From Vitrella brassicaformis CCMP3155 (taxonomy: Eukaryota; Protista; Chromerida), in assembly GCA_001179505.1 (NCBI GenBank), contig CDMY01000209.1:102705-166704 (forward strand): 64,000 nucleotides of DNA, written 5' to 3'. The notes under the pieces were generated by a model, which saw only the letters and a program-made list of their open reading frames with translations, ran no database searches and was not told the origin of the DNA. A program made the translations under genes and the position numbers. Every line of letters starts with the position of its first letter. Positions within the stretch are counted from its first letter, which is position 1. Shown in pieces: positions 18,695-56,328 of the stretch.

Positions 18695-19955
18695 TGATCG
18701 ATCGGCACAATACAAATGACTGACAGCAAGTACGTGAACGTGACTGTTTAGGTTGTACGTTCGTGAGCGAGTGCATGAATGCATGGGTGCCTATCTAACC
18801 GGATGTCTGACTGTCTGCCTTCTGCCCGACATGTGATCTGTTACTCTCGCCCCTCTCGCTTTTGATTTCTCTCTTGGTGTCGTCTGCCTGCCTGCCTGTC
18901 TGTCTGGCTGTCTGAACGTACCTACCGTGTCTCACTCGTTCATTCACACAGCCGTCCTTCCCGTCTCTGGATGCTCTCCTTTTTCTTCTCTATTTGTCAA
19001 TCAGCAAGGCCTGACACACAATACAACACAACACATCACATCACAGGCACCCCTCTTAAGCACATGGCAGTGGGGACAGTAAGGGTAAGTGTCGGTCGCT
19101 CGTGCGCAGAGGAAGAGAGCATCCGTGAGGAGAGAGGTGTCCGGTCGGTGAGTGATTCGTTTTTGTCGGCACACGTACACATACATACACACACTCATGC
19201 GTACATGTTCGTGCGTACTTGTACGGTCTACACGTGTATGGAACCATACAGACAAACTGAGTGGATCGACCGGCAACGGCGACACACATATACACACTTT
19301 TCACAGATCTGGTTGGAGAGATTGGTTGGATGCGTGTACGGATGTGGTTGCTGCAGTGATTGCTTCACAAGTCACACGGCGTGGTGCGTTCAAGGGAGCC
19401 ACTCGCTGCTGCATGTCGGTCGGTCGGTCGGTCAATTTTCGGTCCTCATCCATAGGGCGTCCGCACCGTGCTTCTCTGTCAGTCTGTCAGTCTGTCTGTC
19501 TGCTGCGTCGCTCTCGCGTCTATCGGGCTGCGGTTTGCTTCACATGAACACAACAGTTCACTCTTTGCTTTTCTGTAAGGACAAGATCACCACACACACA
19601 CAACAACAAGATTGTTCCAACTCTTCTGGGCTGGCAGACAGGGGATGAGCGCATCCACCATTTTTCTGCTTACTCGAATGGCCGAATGGGGGGGGACGGG
19701 AGACAGAATGCCTCTGGGTTCTTCTCTGCGCTTCTCGCCTGCTCACACGGGGGGAGGGAGGCTATTTTTCCTGTCAATACTACACTCATCCCCTATTGAT
19801 GTATACAGCATTAATACAGCAGCATCCACACACATTGACAGAGCGGGTGGACAGACAGACAGACAAGCACAGAAGGCCGGTAGGCTTCATTTTATCGGAA
19901 CAAGAAGTTTTTGGTTGCTTTGAGGAGAGGAGCGAGCGGGGAGGGGGGGGGGGGG

Positions 19956-21218: not shown

Positions 21219-22673
21219 TCAACCGTCCAGCCCGTCAAAGCAGACTCCAGTCTCCTCTTGTTCCCTCTCATCTCGCGTCTCGTCCACCTCAGTTCTCGTG
21301 CGCACGAAATTCCCTTTGAATTGGCCGCTCACGTGCGAAGGCTCAGTGGCAAACACACTGAGACACAGACAGACAGACAGACAGACACGATCTATGTCAG
21401 CAAGAAAGCAGCAAAGAGACACCTTTACCTGCCAAAGTGATTGCAGTAGGCGACTGCGTCTCTGAAGTACAGCTCCCTTGATTTCTTGCCCAGAGCAGTC
21501 CATTCATGCTGAGGTTCATTGCGCTTTTTCCAGGTGCGTGGCTTCGAAGTATGGGACCACTGGTCTTCCCTGAACGGCGACGCGTCACCTTCAATCGACG
21601 CGATTTTGGCGAGAGATTCCACTGCCTTGGTGACTCTCTCTGTGTCCCGCATTCCGTCCTGGCAGTATTCTCTCATCGCGTCGTATGTGGTTTCAAGAAG
21701 GGGCTGGACTGATTTATCCTTCTTGCCAGGTAGACAGCCACGTTGCCACGATACCTTGTGGTCGAACGAGTTCGAAGGGTCATGTGTGCGATGGCCAGAG
21801 GGAGGCCCGCGAACGAGATTACCTGCGTACACAGCGAATTGGAGAGCAAACAAGAGGTGGAGCCGCCGCTCCTCACTACGCACACAGTGTGAGAGCTTAC
21901 CAGGCATCCAGGTCAGGCTGTACGCGAACTTGCCGCTATATTCCAGTTCTGTTGTGCGACCCTCCAGCATGTCTTCCAGCCAGTTCTGCCACGCTGAGAC
22001 ATGATCCGGCTTGACTGGACTCTCGAACGCGTAGCCTGCATTTATCAGAGGATGGCTGTAACATACATGGACTTATTCTCAACCATAGGACTTGCCTTCT
22101 GCGTGATCGATGAGACTGCAGCCACCAACATATATATACAGGCATACATACATACAGGCATACATACAGACAGACAGAGACTCATTCGTATGTCGTGTTC
22201 CTTCATTCCCTCCCTTCCGCCTGCCCACTCACCTTCGGATCAGCGGGGTGGCCAGCTTCAGGTGGGCTGATGAGCAAACAAGGAGGTCCCACCAATCGAC
22301 AATCAAGCTCTGCAGGTACGTGATAATTGACCCATCTGATAATCAGACAACACGTCGCCGGGAGCAGCCGCCAAACCTTGGGAATGACATGGTGATATCC
22401 CTGCTCAATCGGTGATGTCTAGTTTGTCTCCTTTGTGAACGGCCGACATTTGATCTTGTTCTTCTTTATCTGAAGCGCCAGCCCCTCATCGCTGCACTCT
22501 ACCTTGTCTCCGCCGGGGCACTTGGTGAAAGGGGTCTCGGAAAGGTCAACGAAGTGGGGAGAGGCTGGTGCCGTCGCGAAGATAAGGAAGACGAGAGCCG
22601 TGACGCGCAGACAAATTGAGGTAGACAGAACCATCAGATCGGCGCTAAGACTCGATTGCCATGTGGCCCCCAT
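21219..22673 (-). CDS. Hypothetical, possibly secreted protein (multi-exon, model uncertain)
   Basis: Signal-like MVLSTSICLRVTALVFLIFATAPA at about 22634; 181-aa coding-like exon 21425-21970; spliced terminal exon ...TGVCFDGLDG*; no family recognised and linkage of the pieces is not proven. Confidence 0.4.
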
Positions 22674-23084
22674 GCGGCCAAGGTATCCTCGCCGACAACT
22701 CGACTTCTCGATTCATTCATTCATTCATTCATCAAGCGTCTCCTATGAACGCATGAGCATCCATGGAAACGGTCTAGCAGCCCTGCAAAACGAGGCAGAG
22801 ACCAGGGCGGCGAGTCCGGCTCACCAAGGTCTCCCTTGGCTACCCCTGGGTTTCGGAGAAAAATGCCAGTCCGTTTTCACCCCGATGGCGCGGGGCTGCC
22901 CATGCTTGTATATGTCCCCCGGGCGAGGGGACACCCTGCTTGTATACTTCCCCCGGGCCAGGGGAGGTAGTGTGCCAAGTATATGTGGTGGGGGTGCGTG
23001 TACGCGTCTGTCTCGCGCTTCGTGTTCGTGTTGTGTGTGTACAGGTATGTGTTCATCTCTGTCTGTCATCTCCCCTCCTTCCCT

Positions 23085-23384
23085 NNNNNNNNNNNNNNNN
23101 NNNNNNNNNNNNNNNNNNNNNNNNNNNNNNNNNNNNNNNNNNNNNNNNNNNNNNNNNNNNNNNNNNNNNNNNNNNNNNNNNNNNNNNNNNNNNNNNNNNN
23201 NNNNNNNNNNNNNNNNNNNNNNNNNNNNNNNNNNNNNNNNNNNNNNNNNNNNNNNNNNNNNNNNNNNNNNNNNNNNNNNNNNNNNNNNNNNNNNNNNNNN
23301 NNNNNNNNNNNNNNNNNNNNNNNNNNNNNNNNNNNNNNNNNNNNNNNNNNNNNNNNNNNNNNNNNNNNNNNNNNNNNNNNNNNN
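23085..23384. other. Assembly gap (about 300 N)
   Basis: N run ending in a (TG)n microsatellite. Confidence 0.95.
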
Positions 23385-23862
23385 TGTGTGTGTGTGTGTG
23401 TGTGGTGATGTGTGTGGCCGCCGTCTTTCCTGTCGTGTCAGATAGCCTGTCTCTCTTCCCTCCCTCCCTCCCCCCCCCTTTATGTGTGGGTCGTGAGTAT
23501 TTGTCTTTGTGCAGAGGGTTGGGTTGCGCATGAGGGTTGACTCTCATATGGTTGCTTGGTACGAGGCTGGGATAATTTCTCGAGACGGGACACGGAAAGA
23601 GTTGAGAAAAAATATCAACACATGCCAATTTGCGCGAGAAGATCTCGCGACCGGTGGGTGCGTGCAACTATTGAACAGGGGGGAGAGATGAAAATCATAA
23701 TTTGAGGTGTCCCAACACGTCCTGGCGACCCCCTGCAGTGCTGCTGAGTGCTCTTCAGTGAAAAAAGCGAAGACTTCGCGACCTGGCGGGTCTCACCGTC
23801 GTTGCTCGTTGTCGGTCCCCTGAAGGTGTGTGGCCACCTGTCCATCCGTCCTACATCCGTCG

Positions 23863-24727
23863 ATGTCGTACAAGCACTTTGACATCGGCAAGGGGGTGGA
23901 CATAATAGGCGACGAGGAGACCTTCTTCATGCTGCTGGGCAGATACAAGGAAGAACTCCATGTAAGCTACGCTGCGTGGCAGGACAGGACAGGAGCCTAC
24001 AGAATGGAATTGATCAAAGGAAGAATTGTTGTTGATGAATTTGATGATTCGTTTCTCTCCCCTGATGTGTGCTCTGTCTGCCTGTCTGCCTGCCTGCCTG
24101 CCTGCCTGTCTGCCTGTCTGCCTGTCTGCCTGTCTGCCTGCCTGTCTGCCTGTCTGCCTGTCTGTGTCTGTGTGTCGCTTACAATGCAGACGAGGGTCGC
24201 GAGCATCTTGAGTGCATGGGACAAGAAGGACTACCAGACGATGCTACGAGACGCCTACTCCCTCAAGGGCTCATCATCGTCAGTCTCATGCACACACATC
24301 CCATGGCAACACCTTGCCCTCGTATATGTCATCCACCCGTCGATCCCTCAGGTATGCGGCAGCGGATCATCTGCAGAGGACGTGCGAGGCCATTTTCTGG
24401 GCGGTGCAGAAGAACCAGCTCGACTCCCTCCCACAACTCATCGATGACTTCAAGATATTCAGCACAGAGGCCAAAGACGAACTGGACAAAATCACGGCTG
24501 GATTATCAATACACCAATGGAGGGCGGGGAGGCAGGGGGCGAGGGAGGAGAGTGCAGGCTACCTGAGGGGAGGGCTAAGAGGGCAAGGGAGGGGAGACGC
24601 CTTGCTAGCTGCCTGTTTATCTATTGTACATATGTGCATCTCCTTCAGTGACTGCGTGTGTGCGCGTGTACAGTCGACAGACTACAAGACACGCCTTTTG
24701 GCTCCACGGACGGACGGACGTACCTGA
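23863..24727 (+). CDS. Histidine-phosphotransfer (HPt) domain protein with His-to-Tyr at the phospho-acceptor (pseudo-HPt); C-terminus uncertain
   Basis: Three exons (23863-23961, 24190-24278, 24352-) splice in frame to MSYKHFDIGKGVDIIGDEETFFMLLGRYKEELHTRVASILSAWDKKDYQTMLRDAYSLKGSSSYAAADHLQRTCEAIFWAVQKNQLDSLPQLIDDFKIFSTEAKDELDKI; matches the HPt consensus AHxLKGSS..xGA..L...C. Confidence 0.85.
24065..24165. repeat. (CTGC)/(CTGT) compound microsatellite in HPt intron 1
   Basis: About 25 tandem CTGC/CTGT units; representative of many intronic microsatellites in the window. Confidence 0.9.
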
Positions 24728-24997
24728 ACTGGACAGTGGATTCGAATGAGCTCGTCGATCGCTAAGAAATGGGGGCCGAACGAAATGGGCATCGATGGAT
24801 GGATGGATCTGTAGACGCCCCATTAATGCTCGTTTCTCTGCTTTCTCGCCGGGGCACAGTGTTTCCAAAAGGACGGAGTTTCCTCTTCCAGCGACCACAA
24901 AGTACGCAGTGGCAATGTGGATGTCTCCGTGTATTGGCCATGCATCGCGTTTGATGTGTGTTTCATCCGCCCGAGAGCTGTGCAGCTGTTGTCACTT

Positions 24998-27900
24998 CTA
25001 TTTGATCTTCGCCTCTATCTTCGTCAATCGCTCTTCCACTTGTTTCTGCATCTCGTTCTGCTGTGTTTGCAACTCCCGCAAGACTGAGACTCACGGTAAA
25101 CGCATCGAAGGAAAGAATAAATGAAAAGGGTGTCTGTCAAGTCTTTCTGCCACCTGGCTCGATCTTGTCCTTGACGTACTCCTCAAAGTGCGTCAGGGCT
25201 GGAAGAGATTGATAGAGACACAGCTCGACGACCTCCATCATGACAGCTCTGCGTGTCCGTGTCTCACCGGTCATGATGTCCGGAGACGTCGTGTCGCGAT
25301 GATATGCGGCCTTCATCCACATCTCGACCTTGCCTTTGTAACTGTCCCGTGCTTGACGCCTCTTTTCGGCTTTCTGCTCCTCAGTGTCCTTGGAAGATTC
25401 CTTTGACGACACACGGACATTTCAGCATTGGAAGGCATTCTGATTGTCCACATCCTGTGTTGGGAGCTCGCCTTTGCTGTGACGTATTGGTGGAAAATAT
25501 ACAGGGGCATCACGGGGATGGTCAGGAGCATTCTGAATGCGTCCCAGTACATTCCCGCCCGTATCAGTACTTCAAGCCTCCCGTGTCCGGGTTGAAACAC
25601 CCCCAGCTGACGGTCGATGTATGCGGGTGTGAAGACGACGGCGTGCATCAGGGCATCGAGGGTGACGTAGATGGCCTCCACCGACCAGGAGGCAATGCGG
25701 CAGAGTGCCGACTGCCGTCCGCCGATGAGGGAGGCGACATAGCGCAGGGGCACCGACACGACCACAGCTGCACATACACAGATGTGGCCACTTGTGGTGG
25801 ATGCAGTTGATGTCTCTTGCCGCACCGACCGATGAGGTTGAATGGCGGCGGGAGGCGCTCGTGCTGCGGCATATTCAGGTACTCATTCAACACGCGAATC
25901 CGCAGCAGCCTGCACGCATTCATTCACGAACGGAGAGAGAGCCGTCATGTATCGCTGTCTCCCTGCCTGTCTTCTTACTGATATTGGGCAGTCTGTGTCT
26001 GCTCGATGGCCGCATACGTCGACGCCTGACATAGAGAGACACACGAAGACAGGAGCATTGATCAGTCTCATGACACGCTCGATGTCCATCGTGTGTGTCT
26101 CACCATAATGGCGATGAGCAGGTTGAGCTATCGATGCGGTTAGACAGAGAGACAACGAAGGGAGTCCTTGTGTGTGTGGCTCGTTTAAGTGTATGTGTGT
26201 TGGTGAGCCTCCCGTACGAGTATGATGGAGGAGAGGATGACGTATGTGAACAGCAGGACGGTCCCCAGGGTGTCGTGGCTCTCGATGGCGTTGTTCAGCG
26301 CCTCATTGAACTCGCCAAGACCCGCGTAGAAACTAACGCAGCCAACCGACAGCACATGGCGACTGGCGCTCTCTCTCTCTGTGTGTGTGTCGGTGTCATC
26401 GAGTACAGTGTGAGCGTGGCTTTGGGGAAGGAGCCGAAGTACTGATGGTCTTCGTCGGACGAGAGGAGGGTGAAGACGACCGCGAAGACCACCAGGATGT
26501 AGACGTACAGACACAGAAACATGCTGATGTCCGAAAACATCCTCACAACCGCACTGACACACACACCCATCACACACACCATCAGACACCTCTCTCTCTG
26601 TGTGCCTGTCTCTCTCACTGACAGTATGAGTGGTCCCACGGCTGGGTGCAGGCTGGCCGTTTGGAGGAGGCGCAAGGCAAAGAGCAGCGCTATGACGATC
26701 CCTGAGCCGACCTTGGCATCCGTTGACCAGCCCATCACGTGGACGGCTATGAAGGCGATGATGGAGGCGCAGGAGCACATATCCACGTAGTTCCTTCATC
26801 GGCACACATCGACAGCACACAAATGAAGCGCCCAACACGAAGCCTGACGCACACCATGAGTCTTCCCAGTACGCTGCCTTCAGGCGGATGAACTGCACAC
26901 ACGTATATATACGATGCATGTCAGTCTTGATCAGTCAGTCATGTCTCCCTTAATCGATGTGCCTCACTTGAAAGCTCTCCAGCAAGACGAATCCACCACC
27001 CGTCAGCACTGCCCCCCACAGCCACACCGCCAGCCACACCCCCGCCATCGTCATCGCACTGTCTCCCTTGATCGACTCGATGCGCAGCAGCACAAAGGCC
27101 ACCCTGACAACACACACACACATAAATACACACACAGATACAGGGATGTTATGCATGTCTCTCCCCCTCGTGGTGCATGGTTGCAGCTTTACATGAGCAG
27201 CATCGATAGCACGCGGCTGATGAAGACATCACGGGGTGCAACTTTGTACCCTCCAGTTTTTGTATTCCTGATTCCAATGCTCCGTGACGAGAGATGTGCA
27301 GTTGGCTGTCGCAATCATTGGGAGGAAAGAGTCATGAGCGGGCCGACAGAGAACCGAGGAGATCGCTTGTGCGGCTTACCTTGGGTGACGACAGAGAGGG
27401 GCTCTGCCGACTCGAGCATCGCAAACCATTCTCTTTCTTTGCCTGCAAGTGACCCTTCGAAGACCTCATTCGGTGCATCGCTGCAGAAATCGGCTGTGAG
27501 CGCCTAAACCGATTGGACAATCAACGTGGCAGTGAAAAGTGCTGTGTGTCTTTCTTATTCTTTACCTCGTTCCAGCTGGAAATCTGCTCAAATTCACTGC
27601 ACGAAACAAGAAAGAAAGATCGTGAAGTACCCTCCTCTTCATTGGCATGATGTCCCCTTCTCTTCATTAAGTCATACTCTGTGAGGGAGTCCTTCGGTCG
27701 CGATTTCATCAACTTGCGGAAGACGGCACAGCAGCAAAGACTGTCGAAGGCCAGCGACTCAGAGTGGTCCTTCAGGAACACCGTCGCGCACACCACCTCT
27801 TTGAGATCCTGCGCCGTCGCATACGGTATTTTCACGCCTCGCTTGACCACCTCCATGGTGACGTCTGGAGCTACGCCTATCATCGGTACGACGACCCCCG

Positions 27901-29066
27901 GTTCTTCGGTAACGGCACGATCCAGGGGCGTCATTCCGAGCTGTCACGAGCAGAGATAGTATCACTCATAGGTCGACAAGTGCATTGCGATAGGTGCAGT
28001 GCAGCCTACAATGTTTTTGACCTTTAGAAGTTGTGGATTGACCGTCAACATCCAGCGCGGGACATCGGCTTTTTCGAGGCCTGCGGGAGAGCGCAAAGAG
28101 ACACGTTGAAGACTCATGCAGTTGTGTGGTCGTCATTTGCAGCACCACATAAGCCCGTGTGCACAGCGAAATGAAGGGGCGTGTGGCCATCCTGCAGGCA
28201 CAGCATGAAGAAGGAGTGAAGACACCCGGCTAACAGGCAGCCACGATACCCGGCCTTTCAGGGTTAGCAGGTGTTGTCTGTCTTGGAACAGCACTTCAAA
28301 CACATCCACATCCATGCACTTCTCTGGGAAGCACACACACAAGGGCCGCGTGGCTGCATCATGCGTCTGCAGTGGTGCGACTGTGCAAACCTGCGGCGAA
28401 ATGAATGGCTGAACCCCAAGTCTCCCACCCTTTCTCCGTCGTCAGCGCTTTCTCGGCTTGCTCAGGCGACAGACCGTCGAGGGCCTTCCGCACACCCTCC
28501 GCATCCCACCCCAGGACGGCCTCTTTGATGCTGTCTCTCAGTTTCCACGTCGGCTCCCAGTCGTCGGCGGCTGGGGCCCCGACCAGGGGGACCTGCAGAC
28601 GACACACAGACGTCCAACAGACCTCTCAGAGTGTGTTACCGTGCCGCTGTCCGCATCACAGCGACACACCTGCTCGATGCGTCTCGGTGCCTTGGTGATG
28701 TCATCGGTGACGTCCGGCAGCTGGGGCTCCATCAGCCCCTGTCCATCGTCCTGCAGCAGAGGGACCTGGTCACTCGAGGCCGACGCTGACATCTGCAATG
28801 CATTGAGGGAGGGAGGGACACAGACATCAGAGGCCGGTGACCACACACACAGAGATGCACTAGGAGCATTGCAAGGTGACCTTGGGATGGCCCGTCTGTG
28901 TGTGGTGGATGGCCTGCTGTGCGGCAGCGTCGCCCTCGTCGACTCTCGGCAGCTGGATGTAGCACACCTCCTCAGCACCACTCGGGCGGCTGTGGCCGTC
29001 TCTCCCACTGCGGCCCTCCCGGCCCTGCAGCCGGGGAGTGCGCTGGCCGTGCAGGAAGCCCAGCAT
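24998..29066 (-). CDS. Ankyrin-repeat TRP-family cation channel, paralog 1
   Basis: Ankyrin motifs GSAIHFAA, DGHTPLHFAV, LGMTPLDRA; S2-S3 YWEDSWNYVD; S4 LLFALRLLQTASLHPAVGPLILSVVRMFSDISMFL; pore TLTLFYAGLGEF; S6 ILSSIILLNLLIAIM; TRP-box-like region then LPPPFNLI; C-terminal coiled coil ...RLTKIEAKIK*. Confidence 0.88.
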
Positions 29067-29189
29067 CTTCGCCGCAGGGCTGTTCCCCGCCAGACGCCGA
29101 GGCTCCCAGTCTCAGGGTTCAGGGTTTCAAAACCCTGAGATGAGGTCCCCGCAATGGAGGCAGGATGGAGGACAAAACTTATCTGTGAG

Positions 29190-29580
29190 ATTCTGTGGTT
29201 GTTGCCGCAGTGGCGAGTGCATCGATGCCCCCGCCCACGACCAAAGCAGCAGCCCAGCAGCGGAGATCTGGGTCGCTGCCGAGTCCAGCCGCTGTGCCGC
29301 ACTACCCTGAAATGGACGGCGGGCGCACTCCTGCGATGAGCACAATACGAGATGGCGACTTTGGTCTCGTCTGGCCTTGATTCTCGAGCAGGCGATGTCG
29401 ATGCTGTTTGGCATTTCTGGACATGCCTGCCAACCTCGAGGGCGAGTCGCCGTTCTGAAGTCTGCAAGATCCGGAGCAGCCGCTGCCTTTCGGCCTCGAC
29501 GTGCTCATACCACTGCACGTCTGACGACTGTCCCGTCCTCAGTCGAAAGCGCCCGTCACCGCCGCCCCTTGGCATCATGA
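29190..29580 (-). pseudogene. Degraded 5' remnant of the expanded-family gene seen intact at 49020-51587
   Basis: 29221-29352 is a direct repeat of 51259-51380; the minus-strand catcgcctgctcgagaatcaag is 2 nt shorter than catcgcctgaagtcgagaatcaag in the intact gene; no downstream body of the gene is present. Confidence 0.6.
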
Positions 29581-30918
29581 CACAAGAGACTTGAAGAGGT
29601 CCAACGAGCGGACGCTGTCACACTCCTCCGCCTTCACCCCTTCCTACAGCATCCGTCGCAAGGACGAGCGGCATTTCGGAGAGGCAACTGATCACCGCGT
29701 GGCGCTGGTGGTCCAGGGGAGGTCCTGGGGGAGGTCTCTGGGAGGACAACAGGGTGGGCGAGTTGGCGGAGGGCGGCGAGTGGAGCCAAAGAGGGGGAAA
29801 GGGTCTGCCGCGCTCGGCACACCTGCACGACCACCCCGATCCGCAGATGCGCTGCCTTGGTCGGAACAAGTAAGAAGAGGACAGACAGACACGTTGGATT
29901 CCTTACCCGTGTTGTGTGATGTGTGTGTAGCGCAGAGGAGCAGACACCTTGCCGTGAAGGACCCGGGCGATCCTGATTTCCTGGGTTTCGCCGTGCGCAA
30001 GCTGTCCTCACCCCCGCCGCCGTCTATCTTCTCCCGGCAGGAGTGAGAGGACACCTGACCAAGTGAATGACATTTGTGGCGGTGCAATACATTCCATGGT
30101 GTGCGGACGTTATTGGTGCCTGTCTGACTGCGTGATTGGGGGCTTCTGTGTGTGTACATGTGAGTAGCCTTCTGCAGCATGCTCTAATGCGGACCTGCCT
30201 GCCTGCCTGTCTGTCTGTCTGTCCGTCTGTCTGTCCGTCTGTCTGTCTGTCTGTCGAGTGCTCTCAAAGAGAGATCATGCGTGTGTACTTGGGTACTCAC
30301 CGCCTGTGTTTGCTGTAGTGTATGAAGGCAGCGATCGCCTGTCTTTCTGTATTGTCTCGTGAGCTCCCCATGTGGCGCATTGCCGGCGGATGGATGGCTG
30401 GCTGTGGGTTCGTGTGCGGCTTCCTCAGCCAAAGAGAGAGATCGAGAGAGGTGTACACACGAGTGCATGCGCACACACGCATACCTGCCTGCCTTGACTG
30501 ATGCAGACTGCATACATGTAATGGGCAGTGCTGTGCTGGACCCCCACTTGTGCGTGTATTTGGACATGTGTGTGTAGGGCAGCTCTACTGTTTTGGAGGT
30601 CCGCTGACGTTCTTTCGTACAGAGCTTTTATTGAATCGTGCTTTTTTGCCTCTCGAATGAACTAGTCTCTGCACAAAATCTGTACAACTACAAAAGACCT
30701 ACAAAACACATGACACCTCACATGTATATGCCTCGCTGTTTGTCGGCATTCAAAGATGGCAGCACGTGACACAGCCACTATCAAAGAATACACGCATCGA
30801 TGGACCAATGGGGCAAGTTAATTGTCTCCCCCTTTCATGCATCCAATGAAGGCAGGCCTCCCTCCCGTCCCTCACCTCCTCCCGACCATGGGGAGGAGGG
30901 CGCTTTCGTCTCCCTCAG

Positions 30919-32292
30919 TCATTCAATGCGAACGCGGAAGGACGATGGCCTGGGTATCGGCCACTGAGGGAAAACGTCTCTCAGGAAGTTGAGACATGCG
31001 TTGCGTCGTCCCCAGCTGTTGTGGCTTTTGGTCAACGCATCGTTCCCTTGCGGCCCTTCTTTGACCTCGACGTCCTCAACAATCACACCTGTGTACAAGG
31101 AAACATCATGCAGCCGTCAGTCAGGAACGCTGGATGAATGGATAGATGGATGGACGGCTGGTTCGTCAGGGTGTCTTACATGCCTCCTCCTCGTCGCCAT
31201 TCAGGTGTGCCGCGAGCCAATTGAAGCATACGTCTTCGCAATTGAGTTCTCCGTTGATGAAGTCAATGACAGGCCTGCACACACAAGTGTACCGTCATGA
31301 CTTGATGTGCATACAATTTGCTGGAGCGCCATTCGAGGGGCTTACCTAGGTATGAGTCTCCTGTACGCATCCATCAGTGACGTAGGCACAAGAGCAGCGC
31401 TCGTTAAAGCCATGTTGTCCTCTTGCCTCTCCGTGGGATACAGCAACGTGTCTGAGCCGATGACACATTTATGAATCGACCGCCGCACCTTCACAGGGCC
31501 GATAATTCGCTGAGGGAAGCGCTGAGCTGCCAAAAGGAGCTTGTGGATCTCGGCTGCACATGCAGCCGAGAGAACAATGCAGCGTTGGATGGATCCATTC
31601 TGTGTGACGGTCCCTACCGCAATGCAGGAGTTTGTCGTCGTCCAGCACGAGTGTGAAGGGTGTCTGGATGTGCTCGCCAACGAAGTATCTCTCCCCCAGC
31701 CCTCTGTCTCCCGGCAAGATGCGCGCCTTGGTCGTGTTGACTTTCCTGAGATGGTTGTGCAGCTCATTGCGAAAAGCCTCCAGAGATTTCCCAGGGGGAG
31801 TCCATACATCGAGGACAATCTCTCGGACAAAGCTGCAGTCTTCAAGACGCGCTTTAACACACGACATGATCCAACGCAACGCACGGAACGGTCCCATCCG
31901 CACAGCCACGGTGACGGACCCCTGCAAGGCGGAAACAGAGTGCCGTTCTGCGCTGCTTCTGATTCGCTCTTGTGCCACACCTGGAGGTCGTGTATCGCAG
32001 TGTCGTTCATCCCCAAAGTCAGTGTAGTGGACCCGCCGGTTGAGCCTTTCCTTCTAATGTGGGATGCGAACCTACATCGGCCTGGCCCAGTATAATCGGG
32101 GACCCACTGATCCAATGTCACCGTCCTCAATGCAGAGAAGTCGTGATCTCCTCCGGCTGCGGCAGCCTGTCTGAGGCCGTTCCAAGTCCTCCGCCTCAAC
32201 ATTCGGAGCAACAGCAGGGCTGTTGTTCCCGAGAGAAGCGCCAGGAGCATGATCCGAAGCGGCCAGCAGGCCTGCTTCGCTCGGGCAAGCAT
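30919..32292 (-). CDS. Glycosyltransferase family 64 (EXTL2/EPC1-like alpha-1,4-HexNAc transferase), type II membrane protein
   Basis: Signal anchor IMLLALLSGTTALLLL; DCSFVREIVLDVW; GLGERYFVGEHIQTPFTLVLDDDKLL (DXD); QRFPQRIIG; NMALTSAALV; NCEDVCFNWL; RRNACLNFLRDVFP. Confidence 0.85.
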
Positions 32293-44893: not shown

Positions 44894-47412
44894 ACAGACA
44901 GGGAGGGAGGGAGGCAGGGATGGAGGGGAGAGAGAGAGAGGGAGAGAGAGAGGAGGGATTGGTTATGCGGACGGACATTCTCTCTCTCGTCTCGTTCGTA
45001 CATGTCTTGCAGCACTCATGTGATATGTGTGTGTCTGTGATGCGTTTGTTGTTGCGATGTCTTCGACTCGACTCGACTCGGATGGGTGGATGGGTAAGAC
45101 GGTCTGACAGCATCATTACTTGACGGATGGGAGAGACACACAGAGGTTGTCACTTACTTACTCGGTCGGTCGGTCGTGGATACGTGCGGCGAGTGCAGTG
45201 AGAGCAGTCAGAGCAGTGAGGTCAGCCCAGCCAGCAGCAACCCAGCGCACTTCACAAAATGACTTGCGTTGCGTGTTGTGGTGTGGCGGCGGTGATGGTG
45301 TGCGCCCGTCCGTCGTCTTGCGTCTGTCGTGTCACAACTTGTCGACCCACTCACTCCCTCACTCACTCTCTACCTGGTTTGTGTGTGTGTGTGTATGTGG
45401 CGTGTAAGTGCTCTGAGCGTGGTGTGGCGTTTTACATCCCTCCCTCCCTCCCCACCTGCTAGTATCTGTATGTCTGAATGTCTGCATAAAGCGCGTATCC
45501 CGGATGGAGATGTGTCCGTGATGGCTGTAGCATGCACGCTCCCCGTTTGTTGCTCGGGTGTATACCTATCCCCCACACACAACACACACACACAACACAC
45601 ATTGGTGCAATCAATCAATCGATGGATGGACCATGTACGCTGCAGGGCGAGGCAGGGCAGGGCAGGGCATTGTGTGTATCTATGTAGGTAGGTGGGTGGG
45701 TAGGTGGGTAGCTTTACGTAAGGGTGTTGGGGAGAGAGAGAGAGAGCGGTTTATGGCTGTTGTCGTCGTGAGGGGGTTCCTTTTGCCGTTCTCGCGCTGT
45801 TTCCTGTGTGCCTGCCTGCCTGCCTGCGTCACGTTTTGCTCTTTATTATACACACACATGTGTTGGCTGAATGCCTGCTGTATGCTGCGTGTATACTATG
45901 GCTACGCCTGTGAATGTCGGCTGCCAGCACCTGTGTATCATACATACACATACACACATCTACTCACATACACCCACACAGGGAGTCTGCATGCTACGTG
46001 TCTGTCTGTGTGGCGTGACTCGTGCCTCTGCCTAGTCCAGAAGATGTCCGTGCGTGGCTGCTATCACTGAGACGCTCTGGCACCGCCAGAATGAGCGCAT
46101 AGGTGATGGATGGATGTGCCTGCCTATCGATCTATCTAAACCCCTCTGTGTGCATGACTTGACATGAGATGACATGCGCTGACTGCCCCATGCTGATGAG
46201 CAATACGGGCAGATATGCGTGCATTCGATTCGCTTTTTTCGGGCGCTCTCGGCTGCCTGCCTGCCCGTCGTCTGTCTGTCTGTCAGCCAGAGTGCTTCGC
46301 TGACAACTGGGTGGATGGATGTGTATGCAGAGAGAGAGGGGATGGGGCGGGCCGCTGGATGGCGATGGCTATTCAGAGAGAGCATGGATGATATGTGGGG
46401 GCGTTTTGAAGTGACAGGGAGTTGCTGGTACCACAGACAGACATTACAGCGCCTCTTATTTTTAGGCTCTGCATGGCCGGCAGGAGGGGAGAGTGTGTGG
46501 GAGTGTATGCGCGATCTGTCTGTCTATCTGTCTGTCTGCGGGCAGTCAGTGCTGGTTCTCGTTTCTCTTCTGACTCCTGCTGCTGCCATGTTCTAGGCCT
46601 TTCTAGCGCGACATCGATCTCCCCTCTTTCTCCCTCCCTCCCTCCCTCTCTGCCTGCCTGCCTGCCTGCCTGCCCGTGTGGGTGTGCGTACACAGATGGA
46701 ATGCGCCCATCCCTGATGGTGGGCGCTGCATACACACCTGTGTGTCGCGAGAAGGCGGCCTTTTTCAAGTGGATGTTGTGTGTGGTGTGTATGCGGCGGG
46801 TTCTCTTCCCCAACCCCACTTTGTCTGTCTGTCTGTCTGTCTGTCTGTATTGGTGTGTCGTGTGCGGCCTGCCTGCCTGCCTGCCTAGGTGCACGCACAC
46901 ATGATACACACATCCATACATCTCTCTGCATACATACTGATGCGTACATGGTGTGTTGTGTTGTGTCCCTCAGAGGAGATGAGGGCCGATGGCTAGTGCC
47001 ACAGACGCCTTGCTTGCTTGGCTGTGTGAGAGTGTGACTGACTGACTTAGTCGTCCTCAACGACGAAAACTACGGAAAGAATCCTATCTCCGACCGAGCC
47101 CAGCTCAGTTTTAGAGAATTATCTCCCTCAAACGCGCATACCGTTCAGTCTGAACGCGGCTCGGCTCGGCTCAGTTTTGGAGGTATGATAAGCTCGCTGG
47201 AAACGCGGCCGGGGAGGGAGCGCTGGGAGTAGCCCTCAAGCAGAACGCGTTGCCGCGGGATGGCTACAGACAATGAGCTGGAAGGAAGGTGAGAAGGGCG
47301 AACAATGGGAAGGCATCGAAAGAAGAACCTCATCGTCTGTTCATGCACGTCAGGTGCGGTTTGCAGATGCGCGATGGCCTCAACGAGCTGACGTCGGCAT
47401 CCAGTTTCTTCG

Positions 47413-54600: not shown

Positions 54601-55842
54601 CATACTCGTACGCGAGGCTCAGCAACACATATCATGCACTCAGCACCTGGGACGAGCCACACACACACAAGGATTCCCTTTGTTGTCTCTCTCTCTGCCC
54701 GCGTCGATAGCTCAACCTGCTCATCGCTATCATGGTGAGACAGACACGAGGGACAGCGACCGTGCCATATGACTGATCAATGCTCCTGTGTGTGTGTCTC
54801 TCTCTATGTCAGGCGTCCACATATGCGGCCATCGAGCAGACACAAACAGCTCAATATCAGTCAGCAGACGACTGACAAGGGACAGCGGCACATAATATAA
54901 GGTTTCTCTCGCCTCTGAGTGCAGGCTGCTGCGCGTTCGCGTATTGAATGAGTACCTCACAATGCCGCACCACGAGCGCCTCCCGCCGCCATTCAACCTC
55001 ATCGGTCGGTGCGACCGACAAGAGACATCAACTGCATCCATCACATGTGAGCATCTGTGTGTGTGCAGCTGTGGTCGTGTCGGTGCCCCTGCGCTATGTC
55101 GCCTCCCTCATCAGCGGACGGCAGTCGGCACTCTGCCGCATTGCCTTCTGGTCGATGAAGGCCCTGTACTCCACCATCGATGCCCTCCCGTTTGCCGTCG
55201 CCTTCACTCCAATTGCCATCTACCGAAAGCTGGAGAAGCTTCAACAACTGATACGGAACGCGATACAGCGGCGACAGTACTGGACGCAGGATGGGTGGAA
55301 GACAGTCCAGATCTGGGACGCATTCAAAATACTCGGTGTCATCCTCGTGATGCCCCTATATCTCCTCTACCATTACGTCACAGCAAAGGTGACAGACTCA
55401 CCGAGAGTTCCAAATGGCCTATCCCATCCAGCAATGGAATCTGTATGTGGTGCCAAAGGAATTGTCCGAGGACACTGAGGAGAAGAAAGCCGATAAGAGG
55501 CGTTCCGCACGGAACAGATACAAAGACAGCATCGACAAGTGGATGGAGGCCGCGGATTATCACGACACGACATCTCCGGACATCATGACAGGTGAGACAC
55601 AGCCCCACCACACACGTGGAGCTGTCACAGGCTCATCACGGCAGATGTGAGCACTGTTTACTGAATGTTCTGCAGCCCTCAAGCTCAACCAATCCGAAGT
55701 GCTGTCAGGTAATAAACAACCAATCTGAAGTGCCTTCGTTTTGTTTTGCATTTCAGTCTTGAAGAGGGTTGACGAGCGACAAACCGAAATGCAGAAAGAA
55801 GTCAACGAGCGGTTGACGAAGATGGAAGCAAAGATCAAGTAG
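51678..55842 (+). CDS. Ankyrin-repeat TRP-family cation channel, paralog 2 (inverted relative to paralog 1)
   Basis: Ankyrin motifs ESAIHYAA, HGRTPLHLAA, NGWTPLHWAA, IGRTLIDIA; S4-S6 nearly identical to paralog 1; pore LFYGGLGKF; LPPPFNLI; ...RLTKMEAKIK*. Confidence 0.88.
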
Positions 55843-56328
55843 AAGTGAGACAACAGTTGTATAGCTCTCGATTGGATGAAAGACATCAAAGTGCGATGCA
55901 TGGCCATACATGCACGGAGACATGGAGCTGATTGACTAAGACTGTCTTTCTGTGTGTGTGTTTTTTTTGTTTGCTTTTTTTGCGGACGCGGTTGACGTAC
56001 TATGATAGTTACACGGGCAGCTTGCCCGAAGTGGTTCTCAACGTCAAGCGATTTCTTACCCTTCCGAAGGCAAACAGGAAGATGAGAGTGCTGAGGTGAG
56101 CAGCACACAAGACAGAAAACGGGCGCCTGCAAGACTCGACAGATTCTGGCATCTTCTCTCTGTTCCTTACAGCAGGCCCTTGACGACGGCATCTGTCTCA
56201 TTGAGGCACACAACGTGCTCACGCAGCAGCCCCAGCGGCGGACCGATCTGGCGCTGATGCCCGAGAGCCCATCTTGACAGCCCCTGATTTCTCCGAGAGG
56301 CTCTCGAGGGCAGTCAGATCAGATCACG

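What the first reader, a model, noticed from the sequence alone, without database searches (positions are those of the whole stretch)
23863..24500. Pseudo-HPt: phosphorelay protein with Tyr in place of the invariant His
Seen: a stand-alone HPt domain with intact exon phases reads RDA-Y-SLKGSSSYAAADHL; codon TAC at 24256-24258 is one base from CAC (His). Known: the His in AHxLKG is the phospho-acceptor; His-less HPts such as Arabidopsis AHP6 act as phosphorelay inhibitors; parasitic apicomplexans generally lack two-component systems. Inference: an independently evolved phosphorelay decoy in an apicomplexan relative or, more speculatively, a Tyr-phosphorylated adaptor linking His-Asp relays to eukaryotic kinases.
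Basis: partly seen in the sequence, partly recalled or inferred. Interest (0 to 1): 0.75.

Follow-up and report, generated by a model that had tools for sequence, protein, structure and literature searches.

The report
His-less duplicate of Vitrella phosphorelay gene
This is a recent, unannotated duplicate of an ordinary, expressed phosphorelay (HPt) gene of the alga Vitrella in which the phosphate-accepting histidine has become tyrosine; it looks more like a copy drifting under weak constraint than a proven signalling decoy.

Summary
A three-exon ORF (23863-23961, 24190-24278, 24352-24502) encodes an HPt domain with TAC (Tyr, 24256-24258) at the phospho-His position. DNA contigs of three runs and an independent metagenome contig carry the same T.

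The context changes the reading. The gene is a roughly 1.15-kb DNA-level duplicate, introns included, of a canonical HPt gene of Vitrella brassicaformis CCMP3155 (CEL96846.1 / A0A0G4EKA0, 113 aa, "DAHALKGSSG"). That gene scores 52.8 bits on Pfam Hpt and has a spliced transcript. The Tyr copy is 96/113 identical to it.

Points against a working gene:
- No database protein or assembled transcript matches it.
- Replacement to silent changes run about 22:2.5 across the small tree.
- Its exons have drifted from the Hpt profile.
- In this genome the ancestral TAA stop is TTA, adding 74 codons of former 3' UTR.

Points for a working gene:
- Tyr, ORF and splice sites are intact in two lineages.
- Exons have no indels (11 in non-coding sequence) and about half the non-coding substitution rate.

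Odds: relaxed or decaying duplicate about 0.55, AHP6-like decoy about 0.35. I found no RNA run, so expression is untested. This is a new member of a known kind, of modest interest.

The parts
23656..23862 (+). Duplicated 5' flank, equivalent to the 5' UTR of the paralogue
   Evidence: Homology to the H-copy locus L002 starts at window 23656. The H-copy cDNA contig L003 starts at the equivalent of 23685. Further upstream the two loci are unrelated.
23863..23961 (+). Exon 1 (33 codons, MSYKHFDIGKG...KEELH)
   Evidence: It is 29/33 identical to P0002 residues 1-33. The donor GTAAGC is conserved in L001 and L002.
23962..24189 (+). Intron 1 (GT..AG), holding a (CTGCCTGT)n-type microsatellite at about 24070-24176
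   Evidence: Removed in the paralogue's cDNA at the same sites. The repeat is 68 nt longer than in L001.
24190..24278 (+). Exon 2: the helix carrying the phospho-site motif DAYSLKGSS
   Evidence: Pfam Hpt profile positions 13-41, 13.2 bits, against 20.3 bits for the paralogue's exon 2.
24256..24258 (+). TAC (Tyr) codon at the phospho-His position; CAC in the paralogue
24279..24351 (+). Intron 2 (GT..AG, 73 nt; 54 nt in L001)
   Evidence: It splits the codon TC|G.
24352..24502 (+). Exon 3 up to the ancestral C-terminus (...DELDKITAG)
   Evidence: It is 43/50 identical to P0002 residues 64-113.
24503..24727 (+). Read-through tail: TTA at 24503-24505 replaces the ancestral TAA, giving 74 extra sense codons of former 3' UTR before the TGA stop at 24725-24727
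   Evidence: The TTA lies in the exact 24423-24804 contigs of X20 and X22 and the exact 24423-24683 contig of X23.
24728..24812 (+). Rest of the duplicated 3' flank; homology to the paralogue ends at 24812
   Evidence: L002 6938 = window 24812. The loose end at 24812 in DNA runs is the paralogue's own downstream sequence.

Best explanation
The locus is a young, intron-containing DNA duplicate of the canonical stand-alone HPt gene of Vitrella brassicaformis. A single C-to-T transition turned the phospho-accepting His55 into Tyr, so the product cannot carry a phosphoryl group between receiver aspartates in the normal way. This much is shown. Since then the copy has taken up amino-acid changes at close to the neutral rate. 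In the sequenced strain it has also lost its stop codon. It has left no trace among annotated or transcript-derived proteins. The inference is that the copy is most likely weakly expressed or silent and under relaxed constraint, that is, a duplicate on its way out and not an established regulator. If it is translated, the retained LKGSS docking motif would make it a competitive binder of receiver domains.
For: The paralogue P0002 (CEL96846.1 / A0A0G4EKA0) was found by exhaustive phmmer as the only relative besides L001's product. It scores 52.8 bits on Pfam Hpt, E 4.9e-14, and is spliced in RNA contig L003. The duplication spans window 23656-24812 = L002 5802-6938, with the same introns. Parsimony counts of replacement:silent changes are 13.5:1.5 (H to Y-ancestor), 4:0 (window) and 5:1 (L001). 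pN/pS between window and L001 is 2.6, not different from neutral; by my hand binomial, omega of 0.3 or less is unlikely. Piecewise Hpt scores fall from 20.3 to 13.2 to none (exon 2) and from 13.6 to none (exon 3). TAA has become TTA in the window only. Three word searches and one exhaustive search returned no protein with Y-type exons other than the read-through calls on L001. RNA contig L003 follows the H-type path, not the Y-type path, into the shared 34-mer. Only about 30 nt upstream of the paralogue cDNA's 5' end are shared with the paralogue.
Against: Tyr, the full ORF and all four splice sites are intact in two lineages that differ by 6-9% in non-coding DNA. Exons have 0 indels against 11 in the surrounding 600 aligned non-coding bases, and 3.3% against 8.7% substitutions (Fisher p 0.0016; weaker if a poorly aligned 5' stretch is dropped). 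Eight of the ten window/L001 replacements are conservative. No RNA run could be laid on the locus, so silence is inferred from absence in assembled collections only. Counts are small (about 25 changes in all).
Confidence: 0.55

Rival explanations
1. A functional pseudo-HPt. The Tyr copy is expressed, folds as an HPt four-helix bundle, docks on receiver domains of Vitrella hybrid kinases or response regulators, and cannot accept phosphate. It would then damp the phosphorelay by competing with the canonical paralogue, as AHP6 does in Arabidopsis. The high replacement rate would reflect adaptive remodelling after duplication.
For: The ORF, splice sites and Tyr are kept in window and L001. Exons have no indels and about half the non-coding substitution rate. 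K(+3), G(+4) and SS are retained next to the site. The excess of replacements over silent changes, about 22.5:2.5, with clustered changes to aromatic residues (L22F, H55Y, Q78F, L79W, V99F), fits positive selection as well as drift. A phosphorelay exists in this species: 7 HKs, most of them hybrid (PMC6324907). There is precedent: plant pseudo-HPTs arose at least twice (PMC5975490), and AHP6 competes with AHPs (PMC7402358).
Against: There is no transcript or annotation. The stop codon is lost in this strain. The copy drifts away from the Hpt profile. The excess of replacements is not significant against neutrality. Very little upstream sequence was duplicated.
Confidence: 0.35
2. A Tyr-phosphorylated adaptor. 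The new Tyr would be a substrate of a eukaryotic protein kinase and link the His-Asp relay to Tyr or Ser/Thr kinase signalling.
For: Only that a hydroxyl residue sits on the exposed face of the phospho-site helix. HPt-like domains with Ser or Thr at the site exist in bacterial ChpA (PMC10896506).
Against: Nothing in the sequence or context points to a kinase partner. All arguments against expression apply here too. H-to-Y is simply one of the single-transition outcomes of CAC.
Confidence: 0.03
3. An artefact: an assembly or sequencing error, a minor allele at 24256, or a collapse of the two paralogues.
For: The locus lies near two 300-N scaffold gaps, and a 93-95% identical paralogue exists that could confuse assembly.
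Against: Exact contigs across 24215-24373 occur in three runs of two studies. H-type contigs are present separately in the same runs. An independent metagenome contig has the same Tyr and collinear flanks.
Confidence: 0.01

Closest known systems
Vitrella brassicaformis CCMP3155 HPt domain-containing protein CEL96846.1 / UniProt A0A0G4EKA0 (P0002; locus CDMY01000247.1)
   Same: Same length up to the ancestral stop (113 aa). Same three exons and intron positions. 96/113 identical residues. 5' UTR, introns and 3' UTR are alignable.
   Different: It has His55 (CAC), Ala56 and Gly63. It scores 52.8 bits on Pfam Hpt, has a TAA stop, is annotated and has a spliced transcript. It sits at a different locus with unrelated flanks.
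Plant pseudo-HPts (Arabidopsis AHP6/APHP1, rice OsPHP1-3)
   Same: A stand-alone HPt paralogue that lacks the phospho-accepting His and arose by duplication of an authentic HPt. Such proteins inhibit the relay by competition (PMC7402358, PMC5975490).
   Different: AHP6 has Asn, not Tyr. Plant pseudo-HPts are old, conserved across species, expressed and genetically validated. This copy is very young, shows no purifying selection at the amino-acid level and has no evidence of expression.
Spt/Tpt domains of Pseudomonas aeruginosa ChpA
   Same: HPt-like domains with a hydroxyl residue (Ser or Thr) at the place of the His (PMC10896506 names the Hpt/Spt/Tpt set; the details come from my own knowledge).
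   Different: They are bacterial domains of a large CheA-type kinase, not stand-alone, and have no Tyr. There is no evolutionary link.
Unprocessed (duplicated) pseudogenes
   Same: A DNA-level duplicate with introns, loss of the key catalytic residue, a near-neutral replacement pattern, stop-codon loss, and no annotation or transcript.
   Different: There is no frameshift, premature stop or splice-site loss in either lineage. Exons are less diverged than flanks.

Membership tests
HPt domain (Pfam PF01627) | Homology to a bona fide family member over the whole domain | tested here: met
   Exon by exon, 29/33, 24/30 and 43/50 residues are identical to P0002. P0002 itself scores 52.8 bits, E 4.9e-14, above the cut-off of 24.6.
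HPt domain (Pfam PF01627) | Own score above the Pfam gathering threshold | tested here: inconclusive
   Only exon pieces could be scanned: exon 2 gave 13.2 bits (profile positions 13-41), and exons 1 and 3 gave nothing. L001's read-through product P0001 gave 13.9 bits (profile positions 39-80).
HPt domain (Pfam PF01627) | Phospho-accepting His in the H-x-x-K-G helix | tested here: not met
   Tyr (TAC 24256-24258) stands where P0002 has His55. That His aligns with the His of 3myf and 7c1i.
HPt domain (Pfam PF01627) | Lys at +3 and Gly at +4 next to the site | tested here: met
   Y-S-L-K-G-S-S in the window and in L001.
HPt domain (Pfam PF01627) | Four-helix-bundle fold | tested here: inconclusive
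   The AlphaFold2 model of the paralogue, built on a 7-row alignment, gives helices 8-15, 18-44, 47-57, 62-82 and 86-112. Mean pLDDT is 55.7, too low for a fold search.
Pseudo-HPt inhibitors (AHP6 type) | HPt paralogue lacking the His | tested here: met
Pseudo-HPt inhibitors (AHP6 type) | Expressed | tested here: inconclusive
   No Y-type protein is present in collections that hold MMETSP and Logan transcript-derived proteins, while the H copy is there. The runs that could be laid were DNA-like.
Pseudo-HPt inhibitors (AHP6 type) | Maintained by selection across lineages | tested here: inconclusive
   The ORF is intact, with 0 exon indels against 11 non-coding and half the substitution rate. 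But replacement:silent is about 22.5:2.5 and the stop is lost in the window.
Pseudo-HPt inhibitors (AHP6 type) | Binds receiver domains and slows phosphotransfer | not testable with these tools
   Needs biochemistry.
Unprocessed pseudogene | Disabling lesion (frameshift, premature stop, splice-site loss) | tested here: not met
   There is none in the window or L001. The only lesions are the His-to-Tyr change and the stop loss.
Unprocessed pseudogene | Neutral replacement pattern | tested here: met
   pN/pS is 2.6 and does not differ from neutral expectation. The numbers are small.

The most novel reading that the evidence does not exclude
A phosphorelay inhibitor caught at birth: the first pseudo-HPt outside land plants. 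It would have arisen within about 10% neutral divergence by duplication of the single known canonical HPt of a chromerid alga. His-to-Tyr plus a burst of surface and aromatic replacements would have turned a phosphate carrier into a competitor. It would still be polymorphic for its C-terminus (stop codon present in one lineage, lost in another).
Probability: 0.3. Interest if true: 0.55.

Novelty: new member of a known kind. Interest (0 to 1): 0.3.

Why it matters
If the Tyr copy is expressed, it would be an independent, very recent origin of a His-less HPt competitor in an alveolate. With both parent and daughter genes at hand and few differences between them, it would be a tractable system for asking how signalling decoys arise from their targets. 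If it is silent, it is simply a decaying duplicate. The main practical value is then a caution: a striking "dead" catalytic residue in a well-formed ORF needs the paralogue context before it is read as a regulatory invention. It also flags an unannotated HPt-like ORF in the Vitrella assembly.

Tried and rejected
- Read laying on the four best holders: all proved DNA-like, with contigs spanning intron 2 and no joints. This confirmed the base but gave no RNA evidence, and the single call was then spent.
- Pfam on single exons and phmmer against PDB with L001's read-through product: below threshold or irrelevant LRR hits.
- JGI metagenome scan with exon 3: 345 pattern hits, none confirmed.
- I first read L001 as a paralogue because homology seemed to end on both sides. 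BLAST showed it is collinear with the window further out, so it is the orthologous locus of another strain or species.
- I first read the "second version" signals in the DNA runs as an allele. They match the H paralogue exactly.
- RNA contig L003 looked like a transcript running out of the window locus. It is a chimera of the H transcript and the minus-strand neighbour, whose introns read CT..AC on the + strand.
- The AlphaFold2 model was too weak (pLDDT 55.7) for any fold search.
- The bacterial promoter/terminator scan is irrelevant for a eukaryote.
- The claim of positive selection was rejected as unsupported. The excess of replacements is not significant, and several changes are clustered multi-base events.

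Full report
**1. What is in the sequence**

On the + strand an ATG at 23863 opens a 33-codon exon, 23863-23961. It is followed by a GT..AG intron (23962-24189), an 89-nt exon (24190-24278), a 73-nt GT..AG intron (24279-24351) and a third exon from 24352.

Exon 2 reads TRVASILSAWDKKDYQTMLRDAYSLKGSS. Exon 2 alone aligns to positions 13-41 of the Pfam Hpt profile (13.2 bits, E 0.11).

After ...DELDKITAG the codon at 24503-24505 is TTA, and the frame stays open to TGA at 24725-24727.

**2. Is the T real?**

Contigs of three public runs (two samples, two studies) cover 24215-24373 without a single difference. They span intron 2, so they are DNA. No alternative base was listed at 24256. One of these runs may be the source of the assembly.

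An independent metagenome contig (L001, ENA ERZ893784) carries the same TAC. An assembly error or minor allele is excluded.

**3. What it is related to**

An exhaustive phmmer search of 1.84 billion representatives was run with L001's read-through product (P0001:30-127). It found only two proteins: that product itself and P0002.

P0002 is CEL96846.1 / UniProt A0A0G4EKA0, "HPt domain-containing protein" of Vitrella brassicaformis CCMP3155. It is also present in the MMETSP transcriptome. It is 113 aa, has the canonical ...RKDAHALKGSSGYAAADHL..., and scores 52.8 bits (E 4.9e-14) on Pfam Hpt. Its His55 aligns with the phospho-His of the solved HPt domains 3myf and 7c1i.

Its gene (L002 = CDMY01000247.1, gene at L002 6001-6578) has the same three exons. 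A spliced RNA contig (L003, run ERR558152) removes its introns at exactly the sites predicted for the window gene.

Exon by exon the window product is 29/33, 24/30 and 43/50 identical to P0002. Homology between the two loci covers window 23656-24812 = L002 5802-6938: 5' UTR, both introns and about 300 nt past the stop. It ends abruptly on both sides.

The window gene is therefore a DNA-level duplicate of a canonical HPt gene, at another locus of the same organism. Three results support the same-organism point:
- The right-hand part of L003 is 100% identical to window 24813-25719.
- H-type contigs sit beside Y-type contigs in the same DNA runs.

**4. The metagenome contig L001**

L001 is collinear with the window beyond the duplicated unit:
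- L001 2-559 = window 22166-22711
- L001 559-1752 = window 23561-24805
- L001 2019-2624 = window 30589-31157

It is therefore the orthologous locus of another strain or species, not a third paralogue. It keeps Tyr, the ORF and all splice sites. It also keeps the ancestral TAA stop after ITAG, which the H copy shares. The TTA of the window is thus a derived stop loss that appends 74 codons of former 3' UTR.

**5. Selection**

Parsimony on the three sequences, exon by exon, gives these replacement:silent counts:

| Branch | Replacement | Silent |
|---|---|---|
| H copy to Y ancestor | 13.5 | 1.5 |
| Window branch | 4 | 0 |
| L001 branch | 5 | 1 |

These counts leave out the two-base change in the split codon (Gly63Ser) and an ambiguous codon 53.

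- Between window and L001, pN is 0.0375 and pS 0.0144. This does not differ from neutral expectation.
- By a hand binomial, omega of 0.3 or less would give 10 or more replacements out of 11 with probability of only about 0.01.
- The excess over neutrality is not significant, and some changes are clustered multi-base events (TTCTGG against CAGTTG). I therefore do not claim positive selection.
- Piecewise Hpt scores fall from the H copy to the Y copies: exon 2 goes 20.3, 13.2, none; exon 3 goes 13.6, none. The changes therefore lead away from the family consensus and are mostly derived in the Y lineage.

On the other side, exons are less diverged than the surrounding non-coding DNA. The figures are 3.3% against 8.7% away from gaps (Fisher p 0.0016). 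The contrast is weaker, roughly 3.3% against 6%, if a badly aligned 5' stretch is ignored. Exons carry none of the 11 window/L001 indels. About half of those indels are slippage in short repeats. The remaining large ones would still predict about 3 in the exons, which gives P(0) of about 0.06.

The ORF therefore seems protected while its amino-acid sequence is not. That pattern fits a fast-evolving young gene or a copy released from constraint only recently.

**6. Expression**

I could find no RNA run holding the stretch, and the one read-laying run returned DNA-like contigs.

- Three word searches (exon 2; P0002; exon 3 plus tail) and the exhaustive search returned no protein with Y-type exons, apart from the prokaryote-style read-through calls on L001.
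- The H copy is present from NCBI, UniProt, MMETSP and a Logan RNA contig. The genome annotation evidently did not call the Y copy.
- RNA contig L003 is a chimera. It consists of the H transcript joined, through a 34-nt stretch shared by the paralogues (window 24779-24812), to the spliced transcript of the minus-strand neighbour of the window gene. That neighbour's introns read CT..AC on the + strand.
- The assembler entered the shared stretch from the H-type side. This suggests that Y-type 3' UTR words were rare or absent in that run. This point is an inference.
- Only about 30 nt upstream of the H cDNA's 5' end are shared with the H locus. The promoter may not have been copied.

**7. Reading**

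Shown:
- It is a His-less duplicate of a canonical, expressed HPt gene.
- Tyr is fixed in two lineages.
- The stop is lost in this genome.
- The replacement pattern is near neutral.
- No transcript turned up in the assembled collections.

Inferred: the copy is most likely silent or weakly expressed and drifting (0.55). The AHP6-like decoy reading (0.35) remains open. Four points keep it open:
- The ORF is suspiciously clean.
- The K/G/S-S docking residues are kept.
- Vitrella does have hybrid histidine kinases, 7 HKs in all (PMC6324907).
- Plant pseudo-HPTs arose at least twice in the same way (PMC5975490; mechanism in PMC7402358).

A Tyr-phosphorylated adaptor has no support. The nearest precedent for a hydroxyl residue at the site is the Spt/Tpt domains of bacterial ChpA (PMC10896506).

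**8. Limits**

All searches used single exons by reference, or natural proteins returned by the tools (P0001, P0002). The Pfam scan, exact look-up and fold of the joined product were therefore left out. The AlphaFold2 model of the paralogue was too uncertain (pLDDT 55.7) to use in a fold search.

Noticed in passing
window 22712-23560 and 24806-30588: Both stretches flank the Tyr-type HPt copy and have no counterpart in the otherwise collinear metagenome contig L001. They are insertions in the window lineage or deletions in L001. The first includes the 300-N gap at 23085-23384.
   Followed up: partly
window 24813-25719 (minus strand): An expressed minus-strand gene converges on the HPt copy. 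Its introns at about 25087-25153, 25200-25267 and 25406-25470 are spliced out in RNA contig L003 at 100% identity. The 169-aa partial product has no Pfam hit.
   Followed up: partly
window 55117-55923: An inverted copy, 70-84% identical, of the spliced minus-strand neighbour gene (L003 983-1571) lies here. It marks a second, older duplication within the window.
   Followed up: no
window 24070-24176: The (CTGCCTGT)n-type microsatellite in intron 1 is 68 nt longer than in L001 and absent from the H paralogue. Similar repeats occur near 30194-30255, 46624-46689 and 18882-18914.
   Followed up: no
L003 (Logan contig ERR558152_26617), join at L003 ~840-875: This public RNA contig is a chimera of two convergent transcripts from different loci, joined through a 34-nt stretch shared by the paralogues. 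It is a caution for anyone using it as a transcript model.
   Followed up: yes
L002 1-5616 and 7220-12578: The canonical HPt gene lies between an alpha-glucan water dikinase-like gene (PF22973, PF01326) and a 1455-aa gene without Pfam hits, both on the opposite strand.
   Followed up: no
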